A DNA stretch of 64,000 nt from the IMG/VR virus record IMGVR_UViG_3300025012_000028, positions 124,001-188,000 of that record, one strand, 5' to 3'. A program made the position numbers and the translations under genes. Positions 12,263 to 43,556 of the stretch are shown here, piece after piece. The notes under the pieces were generated by a model that was given only the letters and a program-made list of their open reading frames with translations, had not been told where the DNA came from and made no database searches. How positions within the stretch are numbered: position 1 is the first letter of the stretch; every line of letters starts with the position of its first letter.

Positions 12263-13486
12263 TTAGTTCTTTCCCTCGTTGAGAATTTCTTTGTACTTGT
12301 GAGCATAAACGTTCTCGACAAAGTTGATAGTGGCATCGTTCCCTCGCTTGAGGATATGTTTGGGAACATTCACATCAGCTTCCTTGAAAGTTCTTTCCAG
12401 ACGATTGATGATACTGAACTGATCGGCATCGAAAGGATAATCACAATCACATGCCCTCACGAAATCCCAAGCATAATATTTGACACGTTTGAAAAACCTA
12501 ATCAGCTTGACAGGTTTCATTTTGGTCAGGTTGTGGATCATGTGGTTGTTCGCCACAACATTGATCAGTTTATTCTCATGCTTCGTGAACCTCATGAAGT
12601 TGAGGTACGGAGTCAGAATCTTGGCGCTCTCGTGTTCATGACCGTAGTGGTGTCGCCCGTTCCGGTAATCCTCAGACTGAGCAGTAACCGCCTTACCGAC
12701 ATCATGGAACAGAACCGCAAGGAAAACCTGATACGAGTAACCTTTCTCCGCGCAGAGGTCGATACTTTTCATTACATGCTCAAATGCCGTATCGTTGACG
12801 TGGTGGGTATGTTCCGGTCCCGCATAGAAATTGGTCAGATCAGCAAGAGGTTTAAAATGATACTTCAGTGCATCAATTTCATGAAGAAATTTGAAGAACA
12901 TAGAAGGATATTTTGAATCCTCGTATACTTTCTTCAGTTCAGCACATACCCTATCAGTAGGAATGTTTACTAGTTTTTCGACGTTCTGTTTCATAAGATC
13001 CATAGTTTCCACGTCACATTTCAAACAGAAACGAGAAATGAACCTTGCGCCTCTGTAAATGCGAAGTGGATCTTCCACAAATGCGACCGGATTTACACAA
13101 CGAAGGATTTTATTTTTAACGTCCTCCGCGCCGTTGAATGGATCTACAATTTCCCCAGACAGGTAATGTTGTGCAATGCTATTGATGGTAAAATCTCTCC
13201 TACCAAGATCAACTTCAATCTGAACACCAGAATGAACTTCAAAGTCTTGATATTTTTCACCAACACATTTTTCAGAACGAGTCAAAGCAATCTCAGATCC
13301 ATCGGTATTGAGATACACCGGAAAACAATCCCCGACCTTGTTAAGAGTAGGAAAGAACTGTTCAAATGATTCTTGAGATGCTTGGACAGTGTAATCTACA
13401 TCTTTAGGTTCAACCCCCATGATAGCATCACGGACACAACCACCAACTTTATAAAGATGAAATTTTTCAGAAATGGTATCGAGCAT
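12263..13486 (-). CDS. cca: CCA-adding tRNA nucleotidyltransferase with HD domain
   Basis: VGGCVRD, DVD, DLGRRDFTINSIA, EDPLRIYRGARF and LFHDVGK motifs; start MLDTISE after AGGAGG. Confidence 0.9.
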   Translation of the reverse strand: MLDTISEKFHLYKVGGCVRDAIMGVEPKDVDYTVQASQESFEQFFPTLNKVGDCFPVYLNTDGSEIALTRSEKCVGEKYQDFEVHSGVQIEVDLGRRDFTINSIAQHYLSGEIVDPFNGAEDVKNKILRCVNPVAFVEDPLRIYRGARFISRFCLKCDVETMDLMKQNVEKLVNIPTDRVCAELKKVYEDSKYPSMFFKFLHEIDALKYHFKPLADLTNFYAGPEHTHHVNDTAFEHVMKSIDLCAEKGYSYQVFLAVLFHDVGKAVTAQSEDYRNGRHHYGHEHESAKILTPYLNFMRFTKHENKLINVVANNHMIHNLTKMKPVKLIRFFKRVKYYAWDFVRACDCDYPFDADQFSIINRLERTFKEADVNVPKHILKRGNDATINFVENVYAHKYKEILNEGKN

Positions 13487-13521
13487 ATTCCCTCCTAAAT
13501 TGAAATTCCCAACTGCCAAAG

Positions 13522-13550
13522 ATTGTAGCACAATTGGGAATTAAAGTCAA
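13522..13550 (-). promoter_or_regulatory. sigma70-type promoter overlapped by a hairpin
   Basis: TTGACT-17-TACAAT; AATTCCCAA...TTGGGAATT inverted repeat at 13504-13542. Confidence 0.7.
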
Positions 13551-14167: not shown

Positions 14168-15220
14168 TTATTTTGTCATAAATTTTACAAAAGCTTCACC
14201 GTCTTCAGACCTATCTTCAGAAAAAGTTAACTTTTTAGGAAACATATCTCTAACATGTTGAAGTAATTCAGACATAATGCCTTGTCTTCTATATTCGGGT
14301 TTGGTATAAATATTTGCTACATGTCCTATTCCTCGTTTATTACTTAATACCTGAATTACCGCTATATGCTGTTCATTTTCATATTTTAAAAATCTATAAC
14401 TTCCATATTTATCTTTTAATACTTTAACTGTAGGTGACAAAATTTCTTCTTTTTCAACACCAACATAAGGATGTTCTTTATTTAGGAAAGAAACTAAAGT
14501 TTCATTACTTCTAATACTCTCAAATATATTATTACTTTCCCCATCAAACATTCCTCGGTTGTCCACATGCTTAATCTGGAACGGGAAAAATGCGACCCAA
14601 TGAGTTCTTCCGTTAGGATGCTTCTTAAACACTCCGTCATATCCTAAAGCTTGATATATTTTCCAATTGAATTCTTTAGGATGATCTGAATAAAAATCAT
14701 TCGCCAAAGAGAATAGACCTTTCACGATATTATCATTCTCAATAACATGAATTTCCGTTGCGGCTCTGATTACTTTTTCTTTGCCTTCCCATTCAACATC
14801 ACCATAATTGGAAAGTGCGTCTGCTAATTCGGGCGAACGTTTAATAAAGAAATTGATTTTATCATATTTCACATTTCCAATCTTATCAGCATCAAGTGGT
14901 TTCTTAATACAAAGATAGACCGGATGAACTGTAGGATTGTCAGACCCGCCTAATTTAGAACCTTTGGTGGATTCCGTCTTTCCTGTATATCCTTCCGCTT
15001 CTGTAATGTCGGTTGTAAAATAAAATCCACTACCAAGCTGATCAGCACCCTGATTAGTAAACTCATATTTAAATTCTTCTATGGCAGTTCCAGATCCATG
15101 ATAGCAAACTAATGGTTGTTTATTTTCGTCAACGACCTTGGAACCCCTAAACCATTTCCTGAACTTAGGGTTCTTGGTGACATCTAATGCTTCAGATAGA
15201 AATTGTTTAAAAGATATCAT
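14168..15220 (-). CDS. leader-tagged putative internal head protein: ART-PolyVal-like ADP-ribosyltransferase plus C-terminal GNAT
   Basis: MISFKQFLSE leader; YHGS...GSGFYFT...PVYL.IKKP...LGYDGV...VAF...QIK; GNAT motif A IYTKPEYRRQGIMSELL. Confidence 0.75.
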   Translation of the reverse strand: MISFKQFLSEALDVTKNPKFRKWFRGSKVVDENKQPLVCYHGSGTAIEEFKYEFTNQGADQLGSGFYFTTDITEAEGYTGKTESTKGSKLGGSDNPTVHPVYLCIKKPLDADKIGNVKYDKINFFIKRSPELADALSNYGDVEWEGKEKVIRAATEIHVIENDNIVKGLFSLANDFYSDHPKEFNWKIYQALGYDGVFKKHPNGRTHWVAFFPFQIKHVDNRGMFDGESNNIFESIRSNETLVSFLNKEHPYVGVEKEEILSPTVKVLKDKYGSYRFLKYENEQHIAVIQVLSNKRGIGHVANIYTKPEYRRQGIMSELLQHVRDMFPKKLTFSEDRSEDGEAFVKFMTK

Positions 15221-16287
15221 TCGAACTCTCCAAAAACATTATCGACAAGATACTTCAGCGTTTTCCAAATACCAGACGAAGTAATACTTTCAAATGCCTT
15301 TTCATCTCTATGTGGATTATTTCTCATTTCTTTGTAGCTAGTCCACACATCTTCGAAGCGTATAAAGAACTCTTGTGGGTTTTCATATACATAATTGTAT
15401 GTCGCACCAGTGAACACTCTCTGTTCCCAAACACTATTATCTTCATAGATATTGAAACTAAGTTTGACATATTTATTTCTTCTATCTTCGTTATAACTTG
15501 CGACTTTTATTTCTTTCATCTCAGGAAGTTGTTCCACTTCTTTATAATAATGCCAATCTCTATCGACATGTCTAAAAGATAAATCTAATGCCGCCTGACA
15601 TCTAGTTTCTGCCCATCGTTCCGATGACCAACCTGATGGTAATTTGTTTCTCATGTGGTTGAGTACATTGACTATTAGATCAATCTTAGGGAAATTGAAA
15701 ATTTTCAATGGAATGTTATAATGGTCACACCAAGATTCGAATACATCAAAATTCATTGGATCATCAAATTGGTTAAACACTTCCACAGCTCCACCTAAAA
15801 TTTCAGGATAAACCGCAACAGCAATTTTACTATACTTGTGTGCGGCATCATAATGTTTATCTATTATAAAATAGAATTTAATTCCTTTGTTTACGTAGGA
15901 GTTCCAGTGTGCTGGTGTGCTTTCTGTAATACACCATTTAGTTCCTGCACCATACTTGCGACTGGCCTCATGACTTCTAATATGATAAACATAAAACTCT
16001 TCATTCTCAAATATTTTGTCTGCATCTTTCGTTTTTACAATTTTTGTTTTGCGCTCAACTTCCTTATCTCTTTTCTTATCCACAAACTGATAGAATGACC
16101 AAAACCCTTTTGGTATCCAATAAGAAATATCTTTTTCACTTCCAGATAATTGATTTTTTGCTTTTAATTCTTTGAACCATTCGATATATTTATCAATATC
16201 TTTATCATTGTAATCCGGATTTCTCCAAACTCGTTTGGCATCGGCAAAGGATTCTACCAACAATATATAGGATTTGAAAGAAATCAT
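15217..16287 (-). CDS. leader-tagged putative internal head protein, PcfJ-like domain
   Basis: MISFKSYILLVE leader; EASRKYGAGTKWCIT...W.SY...FYFI motif. Confidence 0.6.
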   Translation of the reverse strand: MISFKSYILLVESFADAKRVWRNPDYNDKDIDKYIEWFKELKAKNQLSGSEKDISYWIPKGFWSFYQFVDKKRDKEVERKTKIVKTKDADKIFENEEFYVYHIRSHEASRKYGAGTKWCITESTPAHWNSYVNKGIKFYFIIDKHYDAAHKYSKIAVAVYPEILGGAVEVFNQFDDPMNFDVFESWCDHYNIPLKIFNFPKIDLIVNVLNHMRNKLPSGWSSERWAETRCQAALDLSFRHVDRDWHYYKEVEQLPEMKEIKVASYNEDRRNKYVKLSFNIYEDNSVWEQRVFTGATYNYVYENPQEFFIRFEDVWTSYKEMRNNPHRDEKAFESITSSGIWKTLKYLVDNVFGEFE

Positions 16288-16499
16288 TTTATTTCCTTGA
16301 TATTATATGAATCGGGTGTGCGCCTAAAATAACTCTCCACCGATCTTCCTAGTTTCTTTGATAACCCAAAACACATTTTCTTGAATGCTTCATCCTGACT
16401 TGCCGCTTCAGTAGACAGATAATGATTTTCTTTATGGTAGCAGAATGTTCCTTTGAATTTGGATGCTTCCGAAAGATATTGTTTAAATCTAATCATCAC
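16284..16499 (-). CDS. small leader-tagged putative internal head protein
   Basis: MMIRFKQYLSE leader; 71 aa, basic, similar in size to T4 IPI. Confidence 0.65.
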   Translation of the reverse strand: MMIRFKQYLSEASKFKGTFCYHKENHYLSTEAASQDEAFKKMCFGLSKKLGRSVESYFRRTPDSYNIKEIK

Positions 16500-17418
16500 T
16501 TCTCACCTTAGCATCTTTCCATTTGTTAGACAAGAATTCAATTACTTCTTTTGTCGATTTGAGTTTATATCGATGCATTCTCTTCACAAGCTTCTCGACA
16601 CTCATAGATTTAATTTCATCACTTTTATTATTGTGTATATCATTATTTAGAGTTGCTAAAGAGTCACCACGATAGTTATGATAAACTATTTCATATCTTA
16701 AATCATCTGCTTCTGAAGAAAGATCTTTGACTTCATCTTTATCGAATAACTCGACATAGAGATTTATTTTTTCTGGTCTACCACCCATACCACTTTTCAC
16801 TTTTTTCTTATTCAGAAGCATGAATGATTCAAAGTCTTCATAAAAATAAACTGGAATGCTATAAACGTTTGAATAATCAAGTATCTTTTTGTACATTCTA
16901 TTTCTTTCCCATGCATTGTGTTGATCATTCAGAGAAAGTTTTTCAAACGCTTTATAGTCGGAATTAATGAGAAGGTAATTCTTATCTACCATAATATGAA
17001 TTTCTTTGATATATTCATGTGCATTTTCGATTATGGATGTGGGAGAAAAGATTCTGTCCTCATTCTCTTGGTTACGCAACCGCATATCAAGAGATACACT
17101 CGGTCTTCTGAAAGATGGCCCCCAATAATCTACACTCTTACCGGAAAGATTATGAGAAAGTTTCGTACCATCCAACACAAGATTGACCTGTTCGGAATTA
17201 CCAAAGCTTCTAGCATAACCACCATATTTAATTCTACTGGTAGAAAAATAAAATGGTTTAAACTTTTTCCCTTTGTACATCTGATCTGAAGCAGTTCCTA
17301 AATCAGATGCTAATCTAAACTTATCATCTTTAAGAATTGATACTAGTTTATGAACACCAGTATGATGATAGAGAATGGGTGATACACCTTCTATAAGAAA
17401 CTCTTTGAAAGATATCAT
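16489..17418 (-). CDS. leader-tagged putative internal head protein, ART-fold candidate
   Basis: MISFKEFLIE leader; LYHHT...IL, FSTSR and ENEDR (H / STS / ExE arrangement). Confidence 0.55.
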   Translation of the reverse strand: MISFKEFLIEGVSPILYHHTGVHKLVSILKDDKFRLASDLGTASDQMYKGKKFKPFYFSTSRIKYGGYARSFGNSEQVNLVLDGTKLSHNLSGKSVDYWGPSFRRPSVSLDMRLRNQENEDRIFSPTSIIENAHEYIKEIHIMVDKNYLLINSDYKAFEKLSLNDQHNAWERNRMYKKILDYSNVYSIPVYFYEDFESFMLLNKKKVKSGMGGRPEKINLYVELFDKDEVKDLSSEADDLRYEIVYHNYRGDSLATLNNDIHNNKSDEIKSMSVEKLVKRMHRYKLKSTKEVIEFLSNKWKDAKVRSDD

Positions 17419-17693
17419 TTTGGGATGTCCTGTACTTTTATTATTTTTGTAATTTTAGCATATTTTGGATGTACATAATCCAACCTATCAAATAAAACAT
17501 GAGCACGTTTAAGTGTCATTACTTCTGGTTCATCTGTTATATGAATATCATAACCACCCCAACCTATAAATTGTTTAATCCCTTTACGTTTTCCTACATA
17601 AATTACATATTCTTCTCTACCACTATTTCCAATTTTAGTGAGATAATCATCTAATGCTTTATCTTCCTTTATGAATTCTTTAAATGAAATCAT
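17415..17693 (-). CDS. small leader-tagged putative internal head protein
   Basis: MISFKEFIKE leader; ATGA overlaps at both ends. Confidence 0.7.
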   Translation of the reverse strand: MISFKEFIKEDKALDDYLTKIGNSGREEYVIYVGKRKGIKQFIGWGGYDIHITDEPEVMTLKRAHVLFDRLDYVHPKYAKITKIIKVQDIPK

Positions 17694-18508
17694 TTTTTCT
17701 TCCTTATCTTAACTAAAGAATCATCAAACAGAACATAATTCAATTCATTACTACTATCCCCAAAGTATTTAGTTCCGGCGATACCAATAGAAGCAAAATA
17801 CAAAGATGCTTCTTTGGCTGAACCAAATATATGTTTAGCTAGTCCATATATTTGTTCACCACTCTGGTTCCAAAATCTATATGATTCATTTTTTAAAACA
17901 TCATTCAGTGGGATTGACTTTACTTCATCCCCCATATCTTGAAGAATTCCTTTAGGATGAGCCTTCTCAAATAAAGGAATGAGTTTCTTTTTTATTGGTT
18001 CGCTCTGTTCTTTGAGAGATTTATTCCAATGAAGAAATTCATCTTCTGAAGGAATGATATCTACATGATACAATTTACCTTTTGACTTCTTAACTTCTCT
18101 TTGTTGATTGATATTCTGTGCTATTTCATCCATCTTTTTATAATAACCCAAACCATTATCTTTAGTCCACTCTTCTCCATTCAGAGCATCATTCAACATA
18201 CCAGATATAAACTTCTTTGCTTTTTTCAGACCCATAGTATAAATTAAATCTGCTGCTTTTTGTTCAGGTGTTCCAGCTTTAGTTTTAATTCCATTTATTT
18301 CGTAGAACCAAGGAACCGGAGCATCACCAACCTTTTTACCTATATACCATTCAGCAACTTCCTTCTTAGAACTGAAATATAAACCCCACCCATATGCAGC
18401 AGCACCCTCACCACTACCGATATGTTGAAGTTTGAACTCATCAAAATCGTAGGGTGATCCATGATAAGCAATCGGAGATTCAATTAAAAACTTTTTGAAT
18501 GATATCAC
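17690..18508 (-). CDS. leader-tagged putative internal head protein, ART-PolyVal-like domain
   Basis: GTG start MISFKKFLIE; AYHGSP.DFDEF...GSGEGAAAYGWGLYFS...Y, GKLY.V, GIAG.KY and NYVLFDD motifs. Confidence 0.75.
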   Translation of the reverse strand: MISFKKFLIESPIAYHGSPYDFDEFKLQHIGSGEGAAAYGWGLYFSSKKEVAEWYIGKKVGDAPVPWFYEINGIKTKAGTPEQKAADLIYTMGLKKAKKFISGMLNDALNGEEWTKDNGLGYYKKMDEIAQNINQQREVKKSKGKLYHVDIIPSEDEFLHWNKSLKEQSEPIKKKLIPLFEKAHPKGILQDMGDEVKSIPLNDVLKNESYRFWNQSGEQIYGLAKHIFGSAKEASLYFASIGIAGTKYFGDSSNELNYVLFDDSLVKIRKKK

Positions 18509-20090
18509 TCACCCTCCCCATCTGTTTTCCACTGCATAACATCTTTAAAGATAAGATATTCATTATCACTGAACCACCCACTTCTCAACCTAAGATGTTT
18601 GACCTCATTGGCGATTGTGGTTTCAACTGGTTCTTGGTGATATTTATCCTTATCCCCTCCTACAAAACCTTTCTTTTTGAACTTGGTGTTGTCGTGGTAA
18701 ATTTTATCTAAAAGCGCCAACATCTGCTCTGCGCCCTGTGAATATTTTTTCTCGTGCTCATGTCCTTCCCAAGATGCTTTCTCGTCCTCTAGGTAATCCT
18801 CAAGCGTTTTACCGGCATTTGTTTTCATCTGTACATATGACGCTTCAATATATGCTCGATACCACTCTTGATCTGAAAGAGGTTCCCATTTAACCCCATA
18901 AATTTCGGCAAGAGTTGTGATATCAGATTCATAAGATTTGATCAGTTTGATATTATCTAATTTTCTTTTTTCATGTCTTGCGTCTACTTCTTTCGATTCC
19001 ATCTCTTTACGAGAAAATTCAGGAACAAAATCGGTTCTGTCCTTCAGAGTTTTCCAATCTTCACCAATCTCTTTGGCTATATCAATAAATTTAGTTTCGG
19101 CATCCCACGAAAAGTTATAAGGTTCCTTCTCCGAATAGATGTTAACTCTGATTCTATGGTGATCATACTTTTTAGAATATTTGTGGGGCTTCTCACCCAG
19201 ATTAAGATTATCCATATAGGATTGAGGGAAAGAAAATTCTGTATCAATCCTTCTACCTTTCTTAGTCCATGACTTTTCTTTGCTAAATTCTTTGATTTTA
19301 TCTCCAATCTGCATGGCGATCATAGCCGCAAGCTTCCTATGTAACTTAGCTTCATCTTTTGATGTTCCTAAACCACCAGCAGAAAGATATTCGGATTTGG
19401 GATTTAGTTCATAAATGTCTACGATCTTGAAGAACTTCTTATTGAAGAACACGGCTTGCCACGGTTCCCTATCATTGATGATTGCCGACTTTTGGTTTCT
19501 GGCTTCATCAATAAGTCCATCATAGCCCAAGGATTTCCAGAACTGCATTTGTTCTTCGCCAGTTTTTAATTCAGGTTTCACATCATCAAAATATCTATTC
19601 TTCTGAAAATAGAATTCTTCTGGATTTGAAACCTGTGACATTTTAAATAAAGCTTGTTTGTCGTTACATTTATATCTTTTTTAGCTGCTTTGAGATAGTA
19701 ATCATTCAATCCCAACGCTCTAAGAATCCTATCCATGATATGATTCTGCATGGTCTGAAGGTGGAGAATGTTAGGTGAACCAACTAACTCAATAACTCTG
19801 AGGAATCTAGCTCCACGACCATACCAAACGTCTGCGGGATGCTGGCATAAATAAGATAAAGGATAAAGGTAAATTCCTTCTGGGTCTGAGTGGGAGGAGT
19901 CTCGTTGGTGTGGTGATGAAAAATTCTTATTTAAAATATCGGTGTCGGGATTCATTGTAAAATTACACCAATATTGATTTTCAGATGATGTTTTTAATAT
20001 TTTATTCCATTTTTTATAAAATAAATGGAATTGCTTGGGATAGATATCATGAAAATGAATCTCAGTTAAAAAGCTTTTGAAAGAAATCAT
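18505..20090 (-). pseudogene. leader-tagged ART-like gene split by a -1 frameshift (ORFs 19578-20090 and 18505-19641)
   Basis: Leader MISFKSFLTE and PEGIYLYP lie in the 5' ORF; LGYDGLID...EPWQAVFFN lies in the 3' ORF; the second frame opens exactly at the A6 run 19677-19682. Confidence 0.7.
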
Positions 20091-20115
20091 TATTATGCCT
20101 CTGTGTGTTTAAAAT

Positions 20116-20123
20116 TATTTATA
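20116..20123 (-). promoter_or_regulatory. T4-type late promoter TATAAATA
   Basis: Exact consensus about 25 nt upstream of the MISFK start at 20090. Confidence 0.75.
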
Positions 20124-20149
20124 AAATCTATATTGAGGATAAACCAATC

Positions 20150-21079
20150 ATGAAAGATAAAACATATTATATCATTTACGAAACTACAAATTTATTAAAT
20201 GGTAAAAAATATAGGGGAGCGCATAAAACTAAAAATATAAATGATGGGTATATGGGGAGTGGTGTGATAATTAATCAAGCAATTTTGAAATATGGAAAAG
20301 AAAATTTTGAAACAATTCATTTAGCATATGCGTTATCATATGATGATCTTTTTTGGTTAGAAGAATATGTTTTCGTGACTAAAGAATGGGTTGATTTGCC
20401 ACATTCTTATAATTTAAGAGTGGGTGGATGTGGCAAATATTACGAAGAACAAACTAAACAAACATGTTTAGACAAATATGGGGTTGAATTCTATTCCCAA
20501 ACTGAAGAATGTAAACTTAAGAAAATTAACACATGTTTAGAAAAATATGGAGTTGAATTCTATGTTCAAACCGAAGATTTTAAGTTGATAATGAAAAATA
20601 AATACAGCGAAGATAACCCACATCCCTTAACTGGCAGGCCAGTTTTACCAGAAACAAAAGAAAAACTCAGAATCGCAAATTTAGGAAAAGTCACGTCAGA
20701 AGAAACCAAAGCAAAAATAAGCGTAAAATCTTCTGGTAAAAACAACCCTAATTATGGTATTAAACATACAAATGAGACTAAAGAAAAATGTAGCAAAGTA
20801 AATCAAAAATATGAATATAAACTAATTTCACCTAATGGTGAAATTTTCACAACTTTATCATTATTTAATTTTTGTGCCGCAAATGAACTGGATAGAAATG
20901 CATTTAGAAATATTCTTAGGGTTGGTAGAACGACCGTAGAATGTCCCAAAAATGTTACACAATGTAGTAAGTTAAGATTTAATACTACTGGATGGTCGAT
21001 AGAAGAAATGGAGATTATCCCAACTTCACCCAAAGCAAAGTATCCAAGAGAGAAATCATCAATTCCACTCCGTTGGTAA
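20150..21079 (+). mobile_element. GIY-YIG (Seg-like) homing endonuclease with NUMOD3 repeats
   Basis: YIIYETTNLLNGKKYRGAH...DGYMGSG...AILKYGKENF...E...YNL.VGG; ETKEKL / ETKAKIS / G.NNPNYG repeats; likely ATG at 20150 after GAGG. Confidence 0.85.
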
Positions 21080-21652
21080 ATTCCAAACTTCTATTTTATC
21101 TTTTGGTTTAACTACTTTCGAATTGGTGATCAGTTTCATATTGAATAGAACAACCATTCTTTCTCCCCACCCAAATGCGTTATCAACAATTGAATAGTCC
21201 ACACCATGTTGCACTAAGAACCGTCTCAAATTGTTACTGTCGGATGGTTTGATTGCTTCATAGTTGACCATTATGTTTATGAAGATGACTGCGCTAATTC
21301 TATCTTTGTAATTATATTTTGATGCTGCCACTAAAACTTCTTTCCGTTTAGATTTGATACAGTAATATTTCACAAAATCATCGATGGCATGAAAAGGAAT
21401 TGAGGCTTCTTTAGCATCCACACCCTTTTGAATTGTGACAAGATATAACTTCCTACTTCCCTTTTTATATTTCTCTACCACATTATATGAAGTAGTCAGA
21501 TATAAACCGGGAGCAAATTGGAATCTACCTTTCTTCTGAATATAATTTTCATCGGGACCATAATCTAAATTGCCCCCATGCCAGAAAGAAAGAGTATTGG
21601 GTTCTGTAGATGGGGAAATGAGATCTTCGAAGATGGTTTTATATGATATCAT
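21059..21652 (-). CDS. leader-tagged putative internal head protein, ART-like domain
   Basis: MISYKTIFE leader; FWHGG...GRFQFAPGLYLTT...KLYLV...GVDYSIV...VVLFN. Confidence 0.65.
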   Translation of the reverse strand: MISYKTIFEDLISPSTEPNTLSFWHGGNLDYGPDENYIQKKGRFQFAPGLYLTTSYNVVEKYKKGSRKLYLVTIQKGVDAKEASIPFHAIDDFVKYYCIKSKRKEVLVAASKYNYKDRISAVIFINIMVNYEAIKPSDSNNLRRFLVQHGVDYSIVDNAFGWGERMVVLFNMKLITNSKVVKPKDKIEVWNLPTEWN

Positions 21653-22236
21653 TCGGTTTCCTCGTTACAAAACTTTACCCAATCTTCAACACTGTTCAAA
21701 TGTTCTTTAAGCTCATATAAATCATTTATCACAAAAACCCATTGTCGCATACCGATACAATAACAGAGATGTCTACAGAGATATTGTGCTCTATTATAAC
21801 TATCAAGAGCCATATGAGATTTACCATAATCTTTGAGTCTCTGATATAATGCACGTCTGAAATCATTTTCAGTGGGATATTTTTCTAAGAACTTCTCTCT
21901 GTTCTCACTCCTGTTGATTCTATAATCATAATTATTGGAAATGTTTTCTTCCATCTCACGTTCAAACCCATAACTGTCCGTGAGATACTTCAGAACTTTA
22001 TTGACTTTATCCTTACAATATTCATAACCATGTGTATCCCACATGATTCTTTGAAATGCTCGGTTAATAATATCCCCTGCGTGTTCGACTACTGGATTAA
22101 GGACACCACCACCCATCAACATCTGAACCTTTAACATTAAATCTTCGGGTTCACCACGTTGATCTAAAGCTATCTGTATGCTTTTGGCTTTAAAAGAATC
22201 ATCTGATTCAGACAAATATTCCCTAAAAGAAATCAC
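21649..22236 (-). CDS. leader-tagged putative internal head protein, unknown helical domain
   Basis: GTG start MISFREYLSE; 4-nt overlaps on both sides. Confidence 0.7.
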   Translation of the reverse strand: MISFREYLSESDDSFKAKSIQIALDQRGEPEDLMLKVQMLMGGGVLNPVVEHAGDIINRAFQRIMWDTHGYEYCKDKVNKVLKYLTDSYGFEREMEENISNNYDYRINRSENREKFLEKYPTENDFRRALYQRLKDYGKSHMALDSYNRAQYLCRHLCYCIGMRQWVFVINDLYELKEHLNSVEDWVKFCNEETE

Positions 22237-22913
22237 GCTGCCTCCAAATAACCCGGTTTAGTATACTTAGCCAGAGCCGGATTCTGATCATCTACAATAA
22301 TTTCATCTAATACATTCAATTCGTCTGGATCGTGCCACGGATCGATACACACTATCATACCATCAGAAGGACGCTCCATGAAATTCCCAACGTGAATATC
22401 CAGCCTACCGAATTCTCTTCCCTCTTCCATCTTTAACATTGCGTTTCTGAGACTCGGACCTTGAGGAAACATATCTTTATTCTTCTCTGCTCTTCTACCA
22501 ACCCGACCCACGAACCATTCATCCTGTACATCCATAATTACTTGATCAACGAATGTCTCATTACCTTCCGACATAGGTTCAAGCTTTTCTAATTTGACCA
22601 ACTTAATCAATTCGTCTTTACGGGAACGTCTATGGAAAGCAGGAATGGTTTTCATTCGCCCCAACACTCTAGGAAAATGGGGATTGTTTCTGTTCTCGGA
22701 TTTGAGAATATATCTAAGGAAGGATTCATAAGACTGATCTAAAGTCCAAACCTTGATCACATAGTTCTTACTTGGTATTTCAAAAACCTGTGAGTGAGCA
22801 CCACTACCCACTTCTCTCCACTTAAGTTTCTTGAAAAGATTTTTGAGGGAATTGGCACCATAGAATTTCTTCACATTGTATAACTCTAATAAAAATTGTT
22901 TGAAAGAAATCAT
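22233..22913 (-). CDS. leader-tagged protein-kinase-like enzyme
   Basis: MISFKQFLLE leader; VGSGAHSQVF glycine loop, VIK lysine, LEKL, DIHVGNFM catalytic loop, CIDP metal-binding motif. Confidence 0.8.
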   Translation of the reverse strand: MISFKQFLLELYNVKKFYGANSLKNLFKKLKWREVGSGAHSQVFEIPSKNYVIKVWTLDQSYESFLRYILKSENRNNPHFPRVLGRMKTIPAFHRRSRKDELIKLVKLEKLEPMSEGNETFVDQVIMDVQDEWFVGRVGRRAEKNKDMFPQGPSLRNAMLKMEEGREFGRLDIHVGNFMERPSDGMIVCIDPWHDPDELNVLDEIIVDDQNPALAKYTKPGYLEAA

Positions 22914-22940
22914 AGGTTTGTCCTTTGAGATAATTTCTTT

Positions 22941-22948
22941 TATTTATA
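22941..22948 (-). promoter_or_regulatory. T4-type late promoter TATAAATA
   Basis: Exact consensus about 27 nt upstream of the first array gene. Confidence 0.8.
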
Positions 22949-22950
22949 TA

Positions 22951-22986
22951 AAACAAAAGGATGAAGCTTTCACTTCATCCTTTTGT
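22951..22986 (-). terminator. intrinsic terminator
   Basis: ACAAAAGGATGAAG...CTTCATCCTTTTGT hairpin after 22987..23562. Confidence 0.8.
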
Positions 22987-23562
22987 CTATTTAGCGTTAT
23001 ATACTACACAACTTCGGGTTTCTTGAGGGTAGACCGGACAAGTTTTATCTGCTTTCAAACATGTATAACAAAGAGATTTCAGTTCGTACTCAACAAAATT
23101 TTTAGCGATGTTTTTCAGTTCAAACAAACCTTTTGTATTGTCTACATAATAATCATAGTTGTAATTAGCAACTCGATCATCCGATACATTTCCTAAAACT
23201 CTTTCACCAAATCTCTCTACCAACATTGTCTTTGCGTCTGGATACCAAGATTTGAATTTATCTATCTCTTCTGGTTCCCGAATATGAACAAAAATATGGT
23301 GTGTTTTTGGAAGTACATCTATAAACTCCACTAGATAACTTATAGGACCATTATAGAATTCAGTCGAAAGTTTCTTTAGTTCAGATAAAAACAATCTACC
23401 ATGTTCATCTTTAACAGAATCCCATCCCAATAACTCTGCGGCTTCTTTAACTCTATCTACTGATGAAAGGTTATTGACCATACCAAAATCAAATTCTTCC
23501 TGAACATATTCTATGAATTGATCTTTCCCAGACCCGCCCTGTCCATTTATGATGATGATCAT
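22987..23562 (-). CDS. deoxynucleoside monophosphate kinase-like P-loop protein
   Basis: INGQGGSGKD Walker A, GWD..KD..GR.FL, HIREPEEI and YDYYVDN motifs; next to dUTPase. Confidence 0.7.
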   Translation of the reverse strand: MIIIINGQGGSGKDQFIEYVQEEFDFGMVNNLSSVDRVKEAAELLGWDSVKDEHGRLFLSELKKLSTEFYNGPISYLVEFIDVLPKTHHIFVHIREPEEIDKFKSWYPDAKTMLVERFGERVLGNVSDDRVANYNYDYYVDNTKGLFELKNIAKNFVEYELKSLCYTCLKADKTCPVYPQETRSCVVYNAK

Positions 23563-33694: not shown

Positions 33695-34576
33695 ATGTCT
33701 AGAAAACTCACAAATGAAATCATCGATGAACGTCTACTAGGAAGAAAAATTATCAGAATTGGTGACTATAAAACTGCATTAACCAAAATATCATGGAAAT
33801 GTTTGAAGGATGGTTATGTTTGGAACGCAACACCACACGATATAAATTCAGGATATGGATGTCCTGCTTGTGCCAATAAAATACCAATTACGAATGAAAC
33901 AATAGACATCAAATTACAAAACAGATCTATTGTCCGAATTGGCGATTGTATTGGACAGAACAATAAAATTTTATTCTGTTGTCAAATATGTGATTATCAA
34001 TGGGTCACAACACCGAAAAGTATTTTACATGGAAATGGTTGTCCTGAGTGTTCGGGTAAAGTACCATTAACAAATGAAAGAATCGATAATAAATTATCAA
34101 ATAGACCAATAAAAAGAATTGGTAATTGTACCGAGGGCAATAAAATTAATATAGAATGGCAATGTCTTATAGAAACTTGTGGTTCTATATGGAAAGCTTC
34201 GCCGGGTAGTGTATTGAACAATTTCAGAGGATGTCCACATTGTAGGTACAAAAATGAAAAACGTATATATGACTATTTAAGAGAACAGTATTCCCAATTA
34301 AATATTACTCCTCAATATAGAATACATATAAACAACAAACTTTTTGTGATAGATTTCAACCTCAATGATATATTCATTGAATATCATGGCATTCAACATT
34401 ACGAACCAGTTGAATATTTTGGTGGAAAGAAATCTTTTATCAAACAAATTAAACGAGATTACTTACTGAGGGAATATTGTAGTGAAAATAAAATCAAACT
34501 TATAGAAATACCTCATTGGTTTACGAACGATGAACAATATGAATTGTTACAATTTTCGTTAAAAACTTCGACATGA
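33695..34576 (+). mobile_element. zinc-ribbon repeat plus PD-(D/E)xK/Vsr-like homing-type endonuclease
   Basis: Three C...W...GCPxC repeats; NEKRI, IDF, FIEYHGIQHY, RD...REYC and LIEIP motifs. Confidence 0.8.
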
Positions 34577-35721
34577 TTCCTAGTAGGCCCATATGAAACC
34601 ATAGCAATGTTTTTATTCTTGATAAATTCTCTCACATTTTGGGAAATAATTTGGCCTTCATCAATATATTTTATTGTTTCATCTTCCAATTGATCAACAC
34701 AAGTCATACAAACTTTGTGGATTATACAAACACCTTTGTTGTTGTTTTCAAATAAATCTTTTCTGATAGCTTTTCTAATCAAATCAAGGTTTAAAAAACT
34801 AAACCTTAAAGTTCCTTGCCATTGATTGGGAATGTTGGTGGCATCGATGATATTGCAATAGGGTTTATCTACCAATTCCATTGGCAATGGTCCGTTACCG
34901 TGTCGAGTAGTATAAGTTCGCATAACATAGGTAACTTCAATTTCTTTTATATCCATTTCAACACTCAATTCTATTATATTATTCAACCCCGTCTTGGATC
35001 TTGTGACATACGGAAAGAATTCGTTATTTTCATCAAGAAGTAACCCTTGAGCACCTTCGAAAATAACGTTTTTATATCTTTCACTTATATCTTTAGCAGA
35101 CGATAAAATGATTATTCCTTTAAAGAATTCTAAATCTTTAATATACCGATTGATCATATTTTCATTTTCCATCAGTGATTTATAATTATCTGGAATAGTT
35201 TGAATTTCCAACTTTTGGATTCGTTTATATGCATATTGTTTGATTTTTTTAAGTTCTTCATATTCGGAAGTTAAATTAAAAATTAGTCCATTTATGTCGT
35301 GTCGTTCGATAGTTTCCGAAATGCCCATTCCACAGGAACCATGACGATTACCGCCACGCATATCTTCCATCATTTGGTTGAGGATCATGTCATATGGAGT
35401 GGTCACTTTACAAGAAGGATCGACATACACAATGGGTTTAACCCCCTTGGAAACAAGTTCCTCATACTCCTGTCGGAAAATGATGGGATTGACAATGAAA
35501 TGTTTGGAAAGGAAAGTGGGCGAACCATTGAAGCTACCGCTTCCAAAATGGTGGAATACATGGCGAACTCCTTCAGGTGTCACTACGGTATGTCCTGCCT
35601 GTGCTCCACCGTTAAAACGTACCACCACGGCTTCCTCGTTGTACTTTGCAGAAAGGTAATCGACCTGTTTCCCTTTTGCACAATCCCCAAACCCCGAACC
35701 TATGACAGCAAATCCTTTCAT
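34513..35721 (-). CDS. divergent adenylosuccinate synthetase-like ligase
   Basis: GFGDCAKG, RFNGGAQAGHTV, HGSCGMGI, FEGAQG.LLD, PYVTRS.TG and TRHGNGP motifs. Confidence 0.85.
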   Translation of the reverse strand: MKGFAVIGSGFGDCAKGKQVDYLSAKYNEEAVVVRFNGGAQAGHTVVTPEGVRHVFHHFGSGSFNGSPTFLSKHFIVNPIIFRQEYEELVSKGVKPIVYVDPSCKVTTPYDMILNQMMEDMRGGNRHGSCGMGISETIERHDINGLIFNLTSEYEELKKIKQYAYKRIQKLEIQTIPDNYKSLMENENMINRYIKDLEFFKGIIILSSAKDISERYKNVIFEGAQGLLLDENNEFFPYVTRSKTGLNNIIELSVEMDIKEIEVTYVMRTYTTRHGNGPLPMELVDKPYCNIIDATNIPNQWQGTLRFSFLNLDLIRKAIRKDLFENNNKGVCIIHKVCMTCVDQLEDETIKYIDEGQIISQNVREFIKNKNIAMVSYGPTRNHVEVFNENCNNSYCSSFVNQ

Positions 35722-36656
35722 ACTCAACCCTCCATTGTTTTTAATAGATTTTCAATATTCCACGAATGTCTGTGTGAACCCTGTTTTAGTGTAGCGCGGA
35801 TCATCACCCTCTTTAACGATGATCCTTTCCTAATTTTTGTGGCACGAAACCGCATCCACTTCCACAGATAAAAACGAATTATCCCAACTTTAAATGGAGT
35901 GCCGATACCTCCAAAATAATCGAATACTCGACCACCACTGCGATGAAGGTAATAATCGTATTTCATTATTTCAACCTATTCATAAATGCCTGAAGTGCTG
36001 TCTTCAAATTAGCAGTTTCAAAAGAAACATCGGGCGCTTCGATTAAGAAAATTTCTTCTGTGATACTGTTTTTATTTTCTCTTTTATGAACGGCAGTTAT
36101 ACTAACCCTATATGTTTCTTCCATCTTTATTCCTCCATTAAAAATTTAGATTTTTCTAACCATTTGTTAATTTGATGCTCGGTGAACGCTATTGGGAGTT
36201 TACCTTTCCTATAATATTTTTTAAGATGATCTGGAACAACCCAACCTTTATTATCTTCTCTTGCTGGAACCCAATACTCGGTTCTGTGATCGGGTAATGG
36301 TTTACAAGAAAAACCCATAAAATAAACCCTTGGGTGGTACTTCACGGCCCATTTACAATAGGCATCCACACCACCTTTCTTGTGGTCTATCACACCTATC
36401 AGGCGATAGACAACATCACCATAATAATCTGAATGGTGGATTTCTGTTTTCATTTTATTATCCCTCCGCAATTCGTTCAAAGTTCATCATATCAAATTTC
36501 ATTTTGCGTCTACCCATTCTACCCAGACGTTTCAGATCTTTTTTGGGAGGAGCACAACAGGAACATTTCCACCCACCAATCCCAATACAAAGATATTTCT
36601 CCCTCATACGTCTGGTGATCAAGATTGGTGATTTCATAATTCCTCCTCAGATAAAT

Positions 36657-42629: not shown

Positions 42630-43010
42630 TTACCTCAACGTCCCAAGTTTAATAAAATCACCCGAATCTAACAGTTCGTGTACTCCGGTTCCATATTTCA
42701 TCCCAGAATGTTTAACTGCATATTGACTTCCAGATTCCTCTTCACCTATAGTTTTTGTAAGATACATAGGGGAATCAAATTTAATATTCCAACTATAACC
42801 AGTCACCTGATAAACTTTACCAGTCTTATTTGATTTGAATCTATCACCCACTCCCAAGCGCCATCCTTGGTATGCCTCAATCTTTTCCATCATGTCTTTC
42901 ACACCAAGCTTAATATCATCCCTCAATTTCTTATGAAACTCCCTTTCGGGTCTGGTGATAAGAGGAATGGGTTCTTTATCTTCGGTGATAAATTCTTTGA
43001 ATGAAATCAT
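42630..43010 (-). CDS. leader-tagged putative internal head protein
   Basis: MISFKEFITE leader. Confidence 0.7.
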   Translation of the reverse strand: MISFKEFITEDKEPIPLITRPEREFHKKLRDDIKLGVKDMMEKIEAYQGWRLGVGDRFKSNKTGKVYQVTGYSWNIKFDSPMYLTKTIGEEESGSQYAVKHSGMKYGTGVHELLDSGDFIKLGTLR

Positions 43011-43036
43011 GGAGTTATCCTATATGAATTTTTTAT

Positions 43037-43065
43037 TTGACAATTACGGATTTCGGAGTTAAAAT
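43037..43065 (+). promoter_or_regulatory. antisense sigma70 promoter
   Basis: TTGACA-17-TAAAAT on the plus strand, with no plus-strand ORF downstream. Confidence 0.6.
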
Positions 43066-43124
43066 AATCTTGTCCGTTAGGACATAGACATCTACTGCCT
43101 TTTATTATAGGACAATGGACAATC

Positions 43125-43556
43125 CTAGAAATCATCATCTTCATCGGGAGGAATGACTTCTACAACATCATATTTCTCACCAATATATTTATTTGAATAT
43201 AAAAAGTCCTTCATATCTTCTACATCGACCCAACCTAATTTAAGATTGGTGGAAGTCAGAGTTATAATGCAGCTATACTTTTTAAATTTCTTCATTTCTC
43301 CAACAAAGTTAATTTCCAAACACAGAGGTTTTTCTAATTCAAATTTCCGCGCAACATCTGTATGTAGAATGGTATCCCCGAAACCATAAACAATTTCACC
43401 ATCCACAACAACTACTCTCATGATATCCCAACTCTTAACAACCTCTATGGATTTGATTTCATCAAAGGTGGGATTTTCGAATATAAGTTGTTCCTCACGC
43501 TTATACATGTAGGAATCTTTATAATTTTCGGATAAAAATTTTTTGAATGATATCAA
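43125..43556 (-). CDS. leader-tagged putative internal head protein
   Basis: TTG start MISFKKFLSE. Confidence 0.65.
   Translation of the reverse strand: MISFKKFLSENYKDSYMYKREEQLIFENPTFDEIKSIEVVKSWDIMRVVVVDGEIVYGFGDTILHTDVARKFELEKPLCLEINFVGEMKKFKKYSCIITLTSTNLKLGWVDVEDMKDFLYSNKYIGEKYDVVEVIPPDEDDDF

What the first reader, a model, noticed from the sequence alone, without database searches (positions are those of the whole stretch)
22233..22913. Protein kinase carrying a capsid-targeting-like leader
Seen: complete kinase motifs (GSGAHSQV, VIK, DIHVGN, IDP) behind MISFKQFLLE, as the first gene after the late promoter. Known: T7 gp0.7 is an early-expressed kinase that phosphorylates host proteins. 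Inference: a pre-made, injected kinase could disable defences before any phage gene expression, which would be an unusual delivery mode.
Basis: partly seen in the sequence, partly recalled or inferred. Interest (0 to 1): 0.7.

Follow-up and report, generated by a model that had tools for sequence, protein, structure and literature searches.

The report
Phage kinase with a capsid-packaging leader
A distant relative of phage T4 encodes a T7-type protein kinase that begins with the ten-residue tag T4 uses to load proteins into its head, so the enzyme is probably made late, packed into the virion and injected ready-made into the next host, which has not been described for a phage kinase.

Summary

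**Kinase.** It is a true homologue of the T7 gp0.7 kinase domain. A family profile matches T7 gp0.7 at hhalign probability 98.2%, E 4e-14. The catalytic Lys, the D-x-H-x-x-N loop and the T7K-type "DP" motif are conserved. The AF2 model (pLDDT 93.5) finds only kinases.

**Leader.** MISFKQFLLE is one of 18 copies in this 214.5-kb genome of M-I-S-F-K-x-[FY]-[LI]-x-E. The copies sit on mostly unrelated proteins, including ADP-ribosyltransferase and acetyltransferase domains, and use different codons. The motif matches the mapped determinants of the T4 capsid targeting sequence (ipII/ipIII MKTYQEFIAE): residues 4 and 7 for targeting, 8 and 10 for cleavage.

**Phage background.** The genome encodes a gp21-type prohead protease, a gp23-type capsid protein and a gp55 homologue. 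It also has TATAAATA late promoters, one of them 35 nt upstream of this gene and just after a strong terminator hairpin.

**Relatives.** Related metagenomic phages repeat the leader-plus-kinase arrangement.

**Not shown.** Packaging, cleavage at Glu10, ejection, kinase activity and any anti-defence role are inferred.

**Verdict.** A new variant combining two known mechanisms, of moderately high interest.

The parts
22233..22913 (-). Gene for a 226-aa T7 gp0.7-type protein kinase domain with an N-terminal CTS-like leader
   Evidence: ORF. PHROG 15752 E 4e-6. hhalign against T7 gp0.7: probability 98.2%, E 4e-14. AF2 model pLDDT 93.5. Foldseek top hits are all kinases.
22884..22913 (-). Ten codons of the leader MISFKQFLLE. 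Predicted cleavage is after Glu10 (L-L-E|L).
   Evidence: One of 18 genes with M-I-S-F-K-x-[FY]-[LI]-x-E. T4 ipII/ipIII begin MKTYQEFIAE. T4 CTS determinants are at residues 4, 7, 8 and 10 (PMC9026906).
22785..22808 (-). Glycine-rich loop GSGAHSQV (residues 36-43)
   Evidence: G38 is 79/80 conserved and V43 67/80. Aligns with T7 gp0.7 GNGHFSAA.
22752..22754 (-). Lys54 of VIKV (ATP-binding lysine)
   Evidence: K in 76/80 sequences. Aligns with VIKV of T7 gp0.7.
22383..22400 (-). Catalytic loop DIHVGN (Asp172...Asn177)
   Evidence: D172 and N177 are invariant in 80 sequences. Aligns with DMHSGN of T7 gp0.7.
22338..22346 (-). IDP (Asp191-Pro192), the T7K-type 'DP' replacement of the DFG motif
   Evidence: D191 invariant, P192 77/80. 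Aligns with TDPV of T7 gp0.7. The DPV motif is described in PMC13645617.
22941..22948 (-). TATAAATA, T4-type late-promoter-like element 35 nt upstream of the ATG
   Evidence: 45% of such sites lie 15-70 nt upstream of gene starts against 8% for permuted 8-mers. A gp55 homologue is present.
22951..22988 (-). Terminator-like hairpin (17-bp stem) followed by a U-run, between the dNMP-kinase-like gene and the promoter
   Evidence: Fold: dG -23.7 kcal/mol, z -6.0, 0 of 200 shuffles as stable.
22921..22925 (-). Shine-Dalgarno-like AAGGA, 7 nt upstream of the ATG
   Evidence: Read directly from the sequence.
21649..22236 (-). Next gene in the same transcription unit. Leader (V/M)ISFREYLSE, 195 aa, no family match.
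21059..21652 (-). Third gene of the unit. Leader MISYKTIFED (Asp at position 10), with an ART-PolyVal/AcrIF11-like fold as a lead only.
   Evidence: A homologue follows the kinase homologue in the related contig L009.
14168..20090 (-). Further array of leader-bearing cargo genes behind a second TATAAATA at 20123:
- 19578-20090
- 17690-18508 (ART-PolyVal)
- 17415-17693
- 16489-17418
- 16284-16496
- 14168-15220 (ART-PolyVal + GNAT)
42630..43556 (-). Two more leader-bearing genes (42630-43010 and 43125-43556) next to the tail-fibre region

Best explanation
The gene encodes a minimal kinase, a T7 gp0.7 (T7K)-family Ser/Thr(/Tyr) protein kinase domain without the T7 shut-off domain. Its first ten residues are a T4-type capsid targeting sequence.

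Proposed mechanism:
1. The gene is transcribed late from a gp55-type TATAAATA promoter, as the first gene of an operon of similarly tagged proteins.
2. The leader (aromatic residues at positions 4 and 7) docks the precursor onto the scaffolding core of the prohead.
3. The gp21-type prohead protease cuts after Glu10 (L-x-E).
4. The roughly 25-kDa mature kinase stays in the head with the DNA.
5. It is ejected into the next host together with ADP-ribosyltransferase and acetyltransferase cargo.
6. There it phosphorylates host proteins before any phage gene is expressed. By analogy with T7K, this would blunt host defence or take over host functions.

Shown here: kinase homology and intact catalytic residues; a shared peptide-level conserved leader on unrelated proteins; T4-type protease, capsid protein and late-promoter machinery; recurrence of the arrangement in related phages.

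Inferred: packaging, cleavage, ejection, enzymatic activity, substrates and purpose.
For: **Kinase**
- PHROG 15752 (T7 gp0.7-type kinase), E 4e-6.
- The family has 1721 representative clusters at E<=1e-3.
- The 80-sequence profile matches T7 gp0.7 at probability 98.2%, E 4e-14. The G-loop, VIKV, D-x-H-x-G-N and DP motifs all align.
- D172, N177 and D191 are invariant.
- The AF2 model has pLDDT 93.5 and pTM 0.88.
- The 50 listed of the 80 PDB Foldseek matches at E<=1e-3 are kinase-fold proteins, nearly all protein kinases.
- Top BFVD matches include annotated kinases of T7-like phages, E 1e-9 to 1e-7.
- Relatives P0004 and P0006 carry precomputed PF27024 Phage_T7_kinase hits.

**Leader**
- 18 genes share M-I-S-F-K-x-[FY]-[LI]-x-E.
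- Conserved positions use varied codons: Ile ATT/ATC/ATA, Ser TCA/TCT/TCC, Leu six codons.
- Only 3 of 153 pairs of mature parts are similar.
- T4 ipII and ipIII start MKTYQEFIAE.
- In T4, residues 4 and 7 determine targeting and residues 8 and 10 determine processing; gp21 cuts after L/I-x-E (PMC9026906).

**Phage machinery**
- Peptidase_S77 prohead protease, 60.2 bits against a cut-off of 27; its relatives all carry PF03420.
- gp23-type capsid protein. The T4 L-T-E|A maturation site aligns with Y-L-M-E|D here.
- gp55 homologue.
- TATAAATA is enriched upstream of genes.

**Cargo logic**
- Other leader proteins are ART-PolyVal + GNAT (70.5 bits), ART-PolyVal (33.2 bits) and an ART-like protein. 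These are the same classes as T4 Alt and the predicted injected effectors of PMC5512222.

**Recurrence**
- Close homologues keep the leader: MVSFKSFITE, MKRFKNFLNE, MISFKSFLSE.
- In the T4-like contig L009 the kinase homologue is again the first gene after a TATAAATA site, with leader-tagged genes behind it.
- More than 118 IMG/VR stretches carry the exact leader pattern.
- 2 of 183 leader ORFs there are kinases. One of them (L125) sits inside a leader-gene array.
Against: - No experimental data exist for this phage. There is no cultured relative, so presence in virions and cleavage are untested.
- The L-x-E-L part of the leader coincides with a segment that leaderless relatives also have (they start M-[KR]-L-x-E-L-x-G-V-K-K). 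Part of the resemblance to a cleavage site is therefore native to the kinase family. Glu10 also lies inside a predicted helix, residues 4-17.
- The protease-kinase complex prediction gave no answer.
- Pfam-A as held here gives no hit, and PDB sequence matches are marginal.
- A late-made, possibly promiscuous kinase would also be active in the producing cell, and it is unknown how that is tolerated. The position of the T7K inhibitory autophosphorylation serine (Ser216) is His194 here.
Confidence: 0.6

Rival explanations
1. The protein is a late cytoplasmic kinase that is not packaged. It acts in the producing cell late in infection, for example on host or phage proteins during assembly or lysis. 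On this reading the shared N-terminal decapeptide serves another purpose, such as a translation-initiation context, regulated stability, or targeting to an assembly site without encapsidation.
For: - The late-promoter context only shows late synthesis.
- Part of the leader (L-x-E-L) is native to leaderless relatives.
- No direct evidence of packaging exists, and the complex prediction was uninformative.
Against: - The decapeptide is conserved at the peptide level with varied codons on about 15 unrelated proteins. This argues against a nucleotide-level initiation signal.
- It matches the four mapped T4 CTS determinant positions (PMC9026906).
- It co-occurs with a gp21-type protease.
- Its other carriers are ART and GNAT enzymes of the kind known or predicted to be injected (PMC5512222).
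Confidence: 0.17
2. The protein is packaged but does not act as a host-directed protein kinase. It could be a pseudokinase or ATP-binding structural internal protein, or it could phosphorylate co-packaged phage proteins or DNA-associated components rather than host targets.
For: - Internal proteins of T4 (IPII, IPIII) have no known enzymatic role (PMC9026906).
- One close homologue (P0003) has a degenerate glycine loop, GTRSVFASV.
Against: - The catalytic Asp, Asn and Asp are invariant, and the Lys is 95% conserved, across 80 diverse relatives. This indicates selection for catalysis.
- The T7K family is a demonstrated hyperactive protein kinase (PMC13645617).
Confidence: 0.1
3. The protein is a small-molecule kinase of the protein-kinase-like superfamily (of the aminoglycoside, choline or sugar kinase type) rather than a protein kinase.
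For: The best PDB sequence matches of the family profile include spectinomycin phosphotransferase (E 0.0085) and choline kinase (E 0.046) over the catalytic loop. One aminoglycoside phosphotransferase appears among the Foldseek hits (rank 49).
Against: - These matches are marginal and cover only the catalytic loop.
- The profile match to T7 gp0.7 is far stronger, E 4e-14 over 162 columns.
- Structural neighbours are overwhelmingly protein kinases and annotated phage protein kinases.
Confidence: 0.05

Closest known systems
T7 gp0.7 protein kinase (T7K) and its phage homologues (PHROG 15752; Pfam PF27024 Phage_T7_kinase)
   Same: The kinase domains are homologous (hhalign 98.2%, E 4e-14). The same motifs are present: G-x-G loop, VIKV lysine, D-x-H-x-G-N catalytic loop, and the family-specific D-P-[VW] in place of DFG. 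The fold is the same.
   Different: - It has no C-terminal shut-off/DNA-binding domain, being 226 aa against 359.
- Identity is only about 17%.
- It sits in a T4-like myovirus-type genome rather than Autographiviridae.
- It lies behind a late-type promoter instead of being an early gene.
- It carries a CTS-like propeptide.
- The position of the T7K inhibitory Ser216 is His194.
T4 internal proteins IPI/IPII/IPIII and Alt (CTS-bearing, gp21-processed, injected head proteins)
   Same: - The N-terminal leader is ten residues, with aromatic residues at 4 and 7, Leu/Ile at 8 and Glu at 10 (T4 MKTYQEFIAE against MISFKQFLLE).
- The genome encodes a gp21-family protease and a gp23-family capsid protein.
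- The leader is shared by unrelated, rapidly diversifying cargo arranged in arrays.
- The cargo includes ADP-ribosyltransferases, like Alt.
   Different: - The mature part is a protein kinase, a cargo not reported for T4-type CTS proteins (literature searches).
- The leader consensus differs (M-I-S-F-K against M-K-T-Y-Q).
- The set is much larger: 18 genes against a handful in T4.
Kinase-PolyVal (PF18762) domains of polyvalent proteins (Iyer et al. 2017, PMC5512222)
   Same: Both are a phage-borne kinase domain predicted to be delivered into the host with the DNA. Both are compact kinases lacking much of the canonical C-lobe. Both co-occur with ART-PolyVal and GNAT domains.
   Different: - This protein does not match PF18762. 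Only 1 of 80 relatives touches it, at E 0.008.
- It is a single-domain protein, not part of a giant multidomain polypeptide.
- The predicted delivery is by CTS and prohead protease rather than by fusion to virion or MuF-type modules.
Ejection proteins of phiKZ/SPN3US-like giant phages
   Same: Many head-internal proteins are processed after Glu by a gp21-homologous protease and then ejected (PMC5694885, PMC9026906).
   Different: Their propeptides are mostly longer than 100 residues with S/A-x-E sites. Here the leader is a T4-like decapeptide with L/I-x-E. No kinase cargo is reported there.

Membership tests
T7 gp0.7-type phage protein kinase (PHROG 15752 / PF27024 Phage_T7_kinase) | Significant sequence/profile similarity to the family's kinase domain | tested here: met
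   PHROG 15752 E 4.2e-6 over residues 21-192. The 80-sequence profile against T7 gp0.7 gives probability 98.2%, E 4.1e-14, 162 columns.
T7 gp0.7-type phage protein kinase (PHROG 15752 / PF27024 Phage_T7_kinase) | Score above Pfam's gathering threshold for PF27024 | not testable with these tools
   PF27024 is not in the Pfam copy held by the tools. The only evidence is precomputed hits on relatives, 'faint' for P0004 and 'weak' for P0006.
T7 gp0.7-type phage protein kinase (PHROG 15752 / PF27024 Phage_T7_kinase) | Catalytic residues: glycine loop, ATP-binding Lys, catalytic D-x-H-x-x-N, and a D-P-x motif replacing DFG | tested here: met
   G36/G38, K54, D172, N177 and D191-P192 are present and conserved. 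Each aligns with the T7 residues, including TDPV at 212-215 (PMC13645617).
T7 gp0.7-type phage protein kinase (PHROG 15752 / PF27024 Phage_T7_kinase) | Protein-kinase-like bilobal fold | tested here: met
   AF2 pLDDT 93.5. Foldseek against PDB gives 80 matches at E<=1e-3; the 50 listed are kinase-fold proteins, nearly all protein kinases, at probability 0.97-1.00. BFVD top hits include annotated T7-like phage kinases. VIA-align Z reaches 8.6, which is only middling.
T7 gp0.7-type phage protein kinase (PHROG 15752 / PF27024 Phage_T7_kinase) | C-terminal shut-off (SO) domain and early expression, as in the T7K architecture of Autographiviridae | tested here: not met
   The protein ends 30 residues after the DP motif. 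It lies behind a late-type TATAAATA promoter. Jumbophage and prophage relatives also lack the SO domain (PMC13645617), so this excludes the T7K architecture but not the kinase-domain family.
T7 gp0.7-type phage protein kinase (PHROG 15752 / PF27024 Phage_T7_kinase) | Protein kinase activity | not testable with these tools
   This needs a biochemical assay.
T4-type CTS-bearing, gp21-processed internal head (ejection) proteins | N-terminal propeptide of about 10 residues, with targeting determinants at positions 4 and 7 and processing determinants L/I at 8 and Glu at 10 | tested here: met
   MISFKQFLLE has F4, F7, L8 and E10. T4 MKTYQEFIAE has Y4, F7, I8 and E10. The determinant positions come from PMC9026906.
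T4-type CTS-bearing, gp21-processed internal head (ejection) proteins | The same leader is shared by several unrelated proteins of the phage | tested here: met
   18 genes carry it. Only 3 of 153 pairs of mature parts are similar. Conserved positions show synonymous codon variation.
T4-type CTS-bearing, gp21-processed internal head (ejection) proteins | The phage encodes a gp21-family (Peptidase_S77) prohead protease and a T4-type head module | tested here: met
   PF03420 scores 60.2 bits against a cut-off of 27. The gp23 homologue covers 94% at about 30% identity. The T4 gp23 L-T-E|A site aligns with L-M-E|D.
T4-type CTS-bearing, gp21-processed internal head (ejection) proteins | Physical presence of the processed protein in the virion and ejection into the host | not testable with these tools
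   This needs virion mass spectrometry or infection assays. The protease-kinase complex prediction gave no answer.
Kinase-PolyVal (PF18762) of polyvalent proteins | Match to PF18762, and membership of a multidomain polyvalent polypeptide | tested here: not met
   There is no Pfam match for this protein at E<=1. One of 80 relatives matches at E 0.0082. The protein has a single domain of 226 aa.

The most novel reading that the evidence does not exclude
A widespread, uncultured branch of T4-like phages loads its heads with a large arsenal of ready-made host-modifying enzymes. This genome has at least 18 tagged genes. All are addressed by one decapeptide tag and include a T7K-type, possibly hyperpromiscuous, protein kinase. 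That would be the first phage kinase delivered pre-made, able to phosphorylate and disarm host defences at time zero, before any phage transcription.
Probability: 0.4. Interest if true: 0.75.

Novelty: new variant of a known kind. Interest (0 to 1): 0.6.

Why it matters
- **Timing of anti-defence.** T7K was recently shown to disarm many bacterial defence systems by mass phosphorylation (PMC13645617), but it must first be expressed. A pre-packaged version would act before abortive-infection or nuclease systems can respond. That would extend the short list of known injected phage enzymes (Alt, IPI, N4 vRNAP, Dar proteins) with a kinase.
- **A portable tag.** The decapeptide tag found here occurs in more than 118 viral contigs. 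It gives a simple sequence handle for cataloguing candidate ejection proteins in uncultured T4-like phages. It may also offer an alternative CTS for protein-packaging applications of T4-type capsids.
- **Family size.** The T7K kinase family appears far larger in metagenomes (1721 clusters at 50% identity) than the roughly 220 members reported.

Tried and rejected
- **Pfam-A scan** of the protein and six neighbours: nothing for the kinase.
- **PDB sequence search** with the 3-sequence profile: only a chance TFIIS hit. With the 80-sequence profile: marginal APH, EGFR and choline-kinase hits.
- **Megablast, blastn and tblastn against 50,697 phage records:** no match for the region or the kinase. 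There is no cultured close relative and no published virion proteome to consult.
- **Word-index homologue search:** only two relatives. The first AF2 model built from them was poor, pLDDT 54. The exhaustive representative search fixed this.
- **Direct BLASTP to T7 gp0.7:** not significant. The 3-sequence hhalign gave probability 17%. Only the 80-sequence profile gave a firm link.
- **PF27024** could not be run because it is not in the library.
- **Kinase-PolyVal membership:** rejected.
- **Protease-kinase complex prediction:** no answer, neither for nor against.
- **'MKLxEL' as another phage group's leader:** I checked whether the start of distant relatives is a leader of that kind. In the contigs examined it is confined to kinase paralogues, so it is a family-intrinsic N-terminus.
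- **tRNA scan of the window:** none found.
- **Literature searches** for a CTS-tagged or virion-packaged phage kinase: none found.
Full report
**The observation**

Window 22233-22913 is a minus-strand ORF of 226 aa with an ATG start and no upstream in-frame start. It begins MISFKQFLLE and contains these motifs:
- GSGAHSQV, residues 36-43
- VIK with Lys54
- DIHVGN, residues 172-177
- IDP, residues 190-192

Upstream on the coding strand, in order, lie:
- the stop of a dNMP-kinase-like gene (22987-23562; PHROG 139);
- a 17-bp hairpin with a U-run (22951-22988; dG -23.7 kcal/mol, z -6.0);
- TATAAATA at 22948-22941;
- an AAGGA ribosome-binding site;
- the ATG.

The description is accurate, apart from not saying that the gene is on the minus strand.

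**The genome**

The window is bases 124001-188000 of a single 214,553-bp viral record with GC 36.5%. It has no close cultured relative. It is nevertheless a member of the T4 superfamily:
- Its 536-aa capsid protein matches gp23 of T4-like phages of Acinetobacter, Aeromonas, Vibrio, Pelagibacter and cyanobacteria at about 30% identity over 94% of its length.
- A Peptidase_S77 (T4 gp21) prohead protease lies two genes upstream of it, scoring 60.2 bits against a cut-off of 27. All 38 of its relatives carry PF03420.
- A scaffold-like gene and a portal-sized gene lie in T4 order.
- A homologue of the T4 late sigma factor gp55 is present, E 2.6e-8.
- TATAAATA, the T4 late-promoter core, lies 15-70 nt upstream of a same-strand gene start in 31 of 69 occurrences. 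The figure is 8% for the 55 permuted 8-mers. The genes served include the protease and tail genes.

**Is it a kinase?**

Pfam-A as held here finds nothing. PHROGs gives the T7 gp0.7 kinase family at E 4e-6.

An exhaustive profile search found 1721 representative clusters at E<=1e-3. In an alignment of 80 single-domain members, D59, E109, L111, D172, N177 and D191 are invariant. G38, K54, R181 and P192 are at least 90% conserved.

That profile matches T7 gp0.7 itself, taken from NC_001604, with hhalign probability 98.2% and E 4.1e-14. The motif-by-motif alignment is:
- GSGAHSQV ~ GNGHFSAA
- VIKV ~ VIKV
- NPHFPRV ~ RPGIPNV
- DIHVGNFM ~ DMHSGNIM
- CIDPW ~ ITDPV

The last of these is the "DPV" replacement of DFG that a 2026 study identified as the hallmark of T7K homologues (PMC13645617).

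With the deep alignment, AF2 gives pLDDT 93.5 and pTM 0.88. Foldseek finds 80 PDB matches at E<=1e-3. The 50 listed are kinase-fold proteins, nearly all protein kinases: PknB, CK2, MEK1, NleH1 and others. In BFVD the top hits are uncharacterised phage proteins and annotated protein kinases of T7-like phages, at E 1e-9 to 1e-7 and TM 0.5-0.57. VIA-align Z values reach 8.6, which alone would be only middling.

Two relatives carry precomputed Phage_T7_kinase (PF27024) hits. That family is not in the tool's Pfam copy.

Differences from T7K:
- There is no shut-off/DNA-binding domain.
- The position of the inhibitory autophosphorylation serine (T7K Ser216) is His194, and that position is variable across the family.

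I conclude that this is a T7K-family kinase domain with an intact catalytic apparatus. Activity itself is untested.

**Is the leader real, and what is it?**

Eighteen genes of this genome, eleven of them in the window and all on the minus strand, begin M-I-S-F-K-x-[FY]-[LI]-x-E. Conservation stops abruptly after Glu10.

The conserved residues are encoded by varied synonymous codons: three Ile codons, three Ser codons, both Phe codons and six Leu codons. Selection therefore acts on the peptide, not on a DNA repeat. Only 3 of 153 pairs of mature parts show any similarity.

T4 ipII and ipIII both begin MKTYQEFIAE, as a pattern search of NC_000866 and its annotation confirm. In T4 the first ten residues of IPIII suffice for encapsidation:
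- Residues 4 and 7 carry the targeting information.
- Residues 8 and 10 carry the processing information.
- gp21 cuts after L/I-x-E.
- Asp at position 10 blocks cleavage but not targeting (PMC9026906; see also PMC3012670, PMC5694885).

The leader here has Phe4, Phe7, Leu8 and Glu10. One copy (C1:198126-199412) reads MIRFKEFIAE.

The protease specificity is probably conserved as well. The T4 gp23 maturation site L-T-E|A aligns with Y-L-M-E|D in this phage's capsid protein.

**What else carries the tag?**

- Window 14168-15220 is ART-PolyVal (70.5 bits against a cut-off of 31.2) plus a GNAT acetyltransferase.
- Window 17690-18508 is ART-PolyVal, 33.2 bits.
- Window 21059-21652, two genes downstream of the kinase, has ART-PolyVal/AcrIF11-like neighbours in the ESM Atlas. 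These are leads only.

These are the enzyme classes of T4 Alt and of the "polyvalent proteins" predicted to enter the host with the DNA (PMC5512222). The tagged genes form arrays behind late promoters: 22913-21059 behind the site at 22948, and 20090-14168 behind the site at 20123.

**Recurrence elsewhere**

- The closest homologues keep the leader: MVSFKSFITE, MKRFKNFLNE, MISFKSFLSE, MITFKQFLSE.
- In a 133-kb T4-like metagenomic contig (L009, which has gp23 and the T4 scaffold protein), the kinase homologue is again the first gene behind a TATAAATA site. Leader-tagged genes follow it, including the homologue of 21059-21652.
In those loci I found 183 leader-type ORFs, up to nine per locus. Two are kinase-family members, and one (L125) sits in the middle of a leader-gene array.

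**A caveat found on the way**

Most distant relatives lack "MISFK" and start M-[KR]-L-x-E-L-x-G-V-K-K. This start aligns with residues 6-16 of the query. The L-x-E-L of the leader is therefore also a native feature of the kinase family's first helix. The tag may have arisen simply by adding about five residues.

Glu10 lies within predicted helix 4-17, and the first ten residues have pLDDT of only 62. This weakens the argument that L-x-E here is purely a cleavage site. It does not affect the match of the full decapeptide to the genome-wide consensus.

A protease-kinase complex prediction gave no answer.

**Mechanism and rivals**

Best explanation (confidence 0.6): late synthesis, CTS-mediated docking to the prohead core, cleavage after Glu10 by the gp21-type protease, storage with the DNA, ejection, and phosphorylation of host proteins before phage gene expression. 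An anti-defence or take-over role is inferred by analogy with T7K.

Rivals:
- A late cytoplasmic kinase whose tag has another role (0.17).
- A packaged but non-host-directed or non-catalytic protein (0.1).
- A small-molecule kinase (0.05). This rests only on marginal APH and choline-kinase matches.

**Comparison and novelty**

It works like T4 Alt or IPI in its delivery and like T7K in its chemistry. It passes the testable membership features of both the T7K kinase-domain family and the T4-type CTS cargo class. It fails Kinase-PolyVal.

Injected phage enzymes and injected-kinase predictions already exist, so this is not categorically new. Three full-text searches found no report of a CTS-tagged or virion-packaged phage kinase, and the T7K survey does not mention T4-like phages. 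I rate it a new variant of a known kind, with interest 0.6.

Noticed in passing
G000:C1:110832-114303 (outside the window, about 10-13 kb upstream of its start): Four consecutive minus-strand genes (710, 188, 165 and 88 aa) start with a second ten-residue leader type, M-[SNK]-I-[LF]-x-[SK]-I-L-x-E (MSILHKILEE, MKILNKILSE, MNIFDSILKE, MSILESILNE). They lie behind a TATAAATA site at C1:114334. This may be a second class of I-L-x-E-terminated propeptide. The 188-aa protein scores 24.3 bits on YscJ_FliF against a cut-off of 24.4.
   Followed up: partly
window 21059-21652 (-): This leader-tagged protein has Asp instead of Glu at position 10 (MISYKTIFED). In T4, Asp10 blocks processing but still allows targeting (PMC9026906). 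ESM Atlas neighbours point to an ART-PolyVal/AcrIF11-like ADP-ribosyltransferase fold. Its homologue in L009 has Glu-Glu at positions 9-10.
   Followed up: partly
window 14168-15220 (-) and 17690-18508 (-): These are leader-tagged ADP-ribosyltransferases. The first is ART-PolyVal at 70.5 bits fused to a GNAT acetyltransferase. The second is ART-PolyVal at 33.2 bits with a GTG start.
   Followed up: partly
window 20105-21079 (+): A plus-strand gene with NUMOD3 (40.9 bits) and DUF7487 matches interrupts the minus-strand array of leader genes. By eye it has a GIY-YIG-like N-terminus, so it is likely a homing endonuclease. A similar DUF7487 protein neighbours kinase homologues in L009 and L018.
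   Followed up: partly
window 34513-35727 (-): An adenylosuccinate-synthetase homologue (Pfam 163 bits) whose best PHROG is the PurZ-type enzyme. This could indicate 2-aminoadenine (Z-base) DNA, but that was not tested.
   Followed up: no
G000:C1:203418-203684 (outside the window): A weak second Peptidase_S77-like fragment or paralogue, 22.8-24 bits and below the cut-off. It recalls the diverged protease paralogue reported in SPN3US-like phages (PMC5694885).
   Followed up: no
T4 NC_000866: 18966-19130 (gene 61.1), locus L142: The 54-aa hypothetical T4 protein gp61.1 starts MKTFKEFIKE, which is a CTS-like decapeptide. It is 8/10 identical to the start of window gene 17415-17693, MISFKEFIKE.
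   Followed up: no
Proteins P0006, P0012, P0014, P0016, P0019, P0030; locus L018: Some metagenomic relatives are long proteins (about 800 to 1769 aa) with three to five tandem copies of this kinase domain. Their role is unknown.
   Followed up: no
window 12263-13531 (-) and 8458-9579 (-): A phage-encoded tRNA nucleotidyltransferase (CCA-adding type, PHROG 2244, E 9e-86) and a second nucleotidyltransferase (PHROG 388). ARAGORN found no tRNA gene in the window.
   Followed up: no
locus L010 (ena:ERZ27313204 k141_398871): In one contig the kinase-containing phage segment abuts ordinary bacterial genes (CrcB, RuvX, prephenate dehydrogenase, NAD kinase). This could be a chimeric assembly or an unexpected junction.
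   Followed up: no
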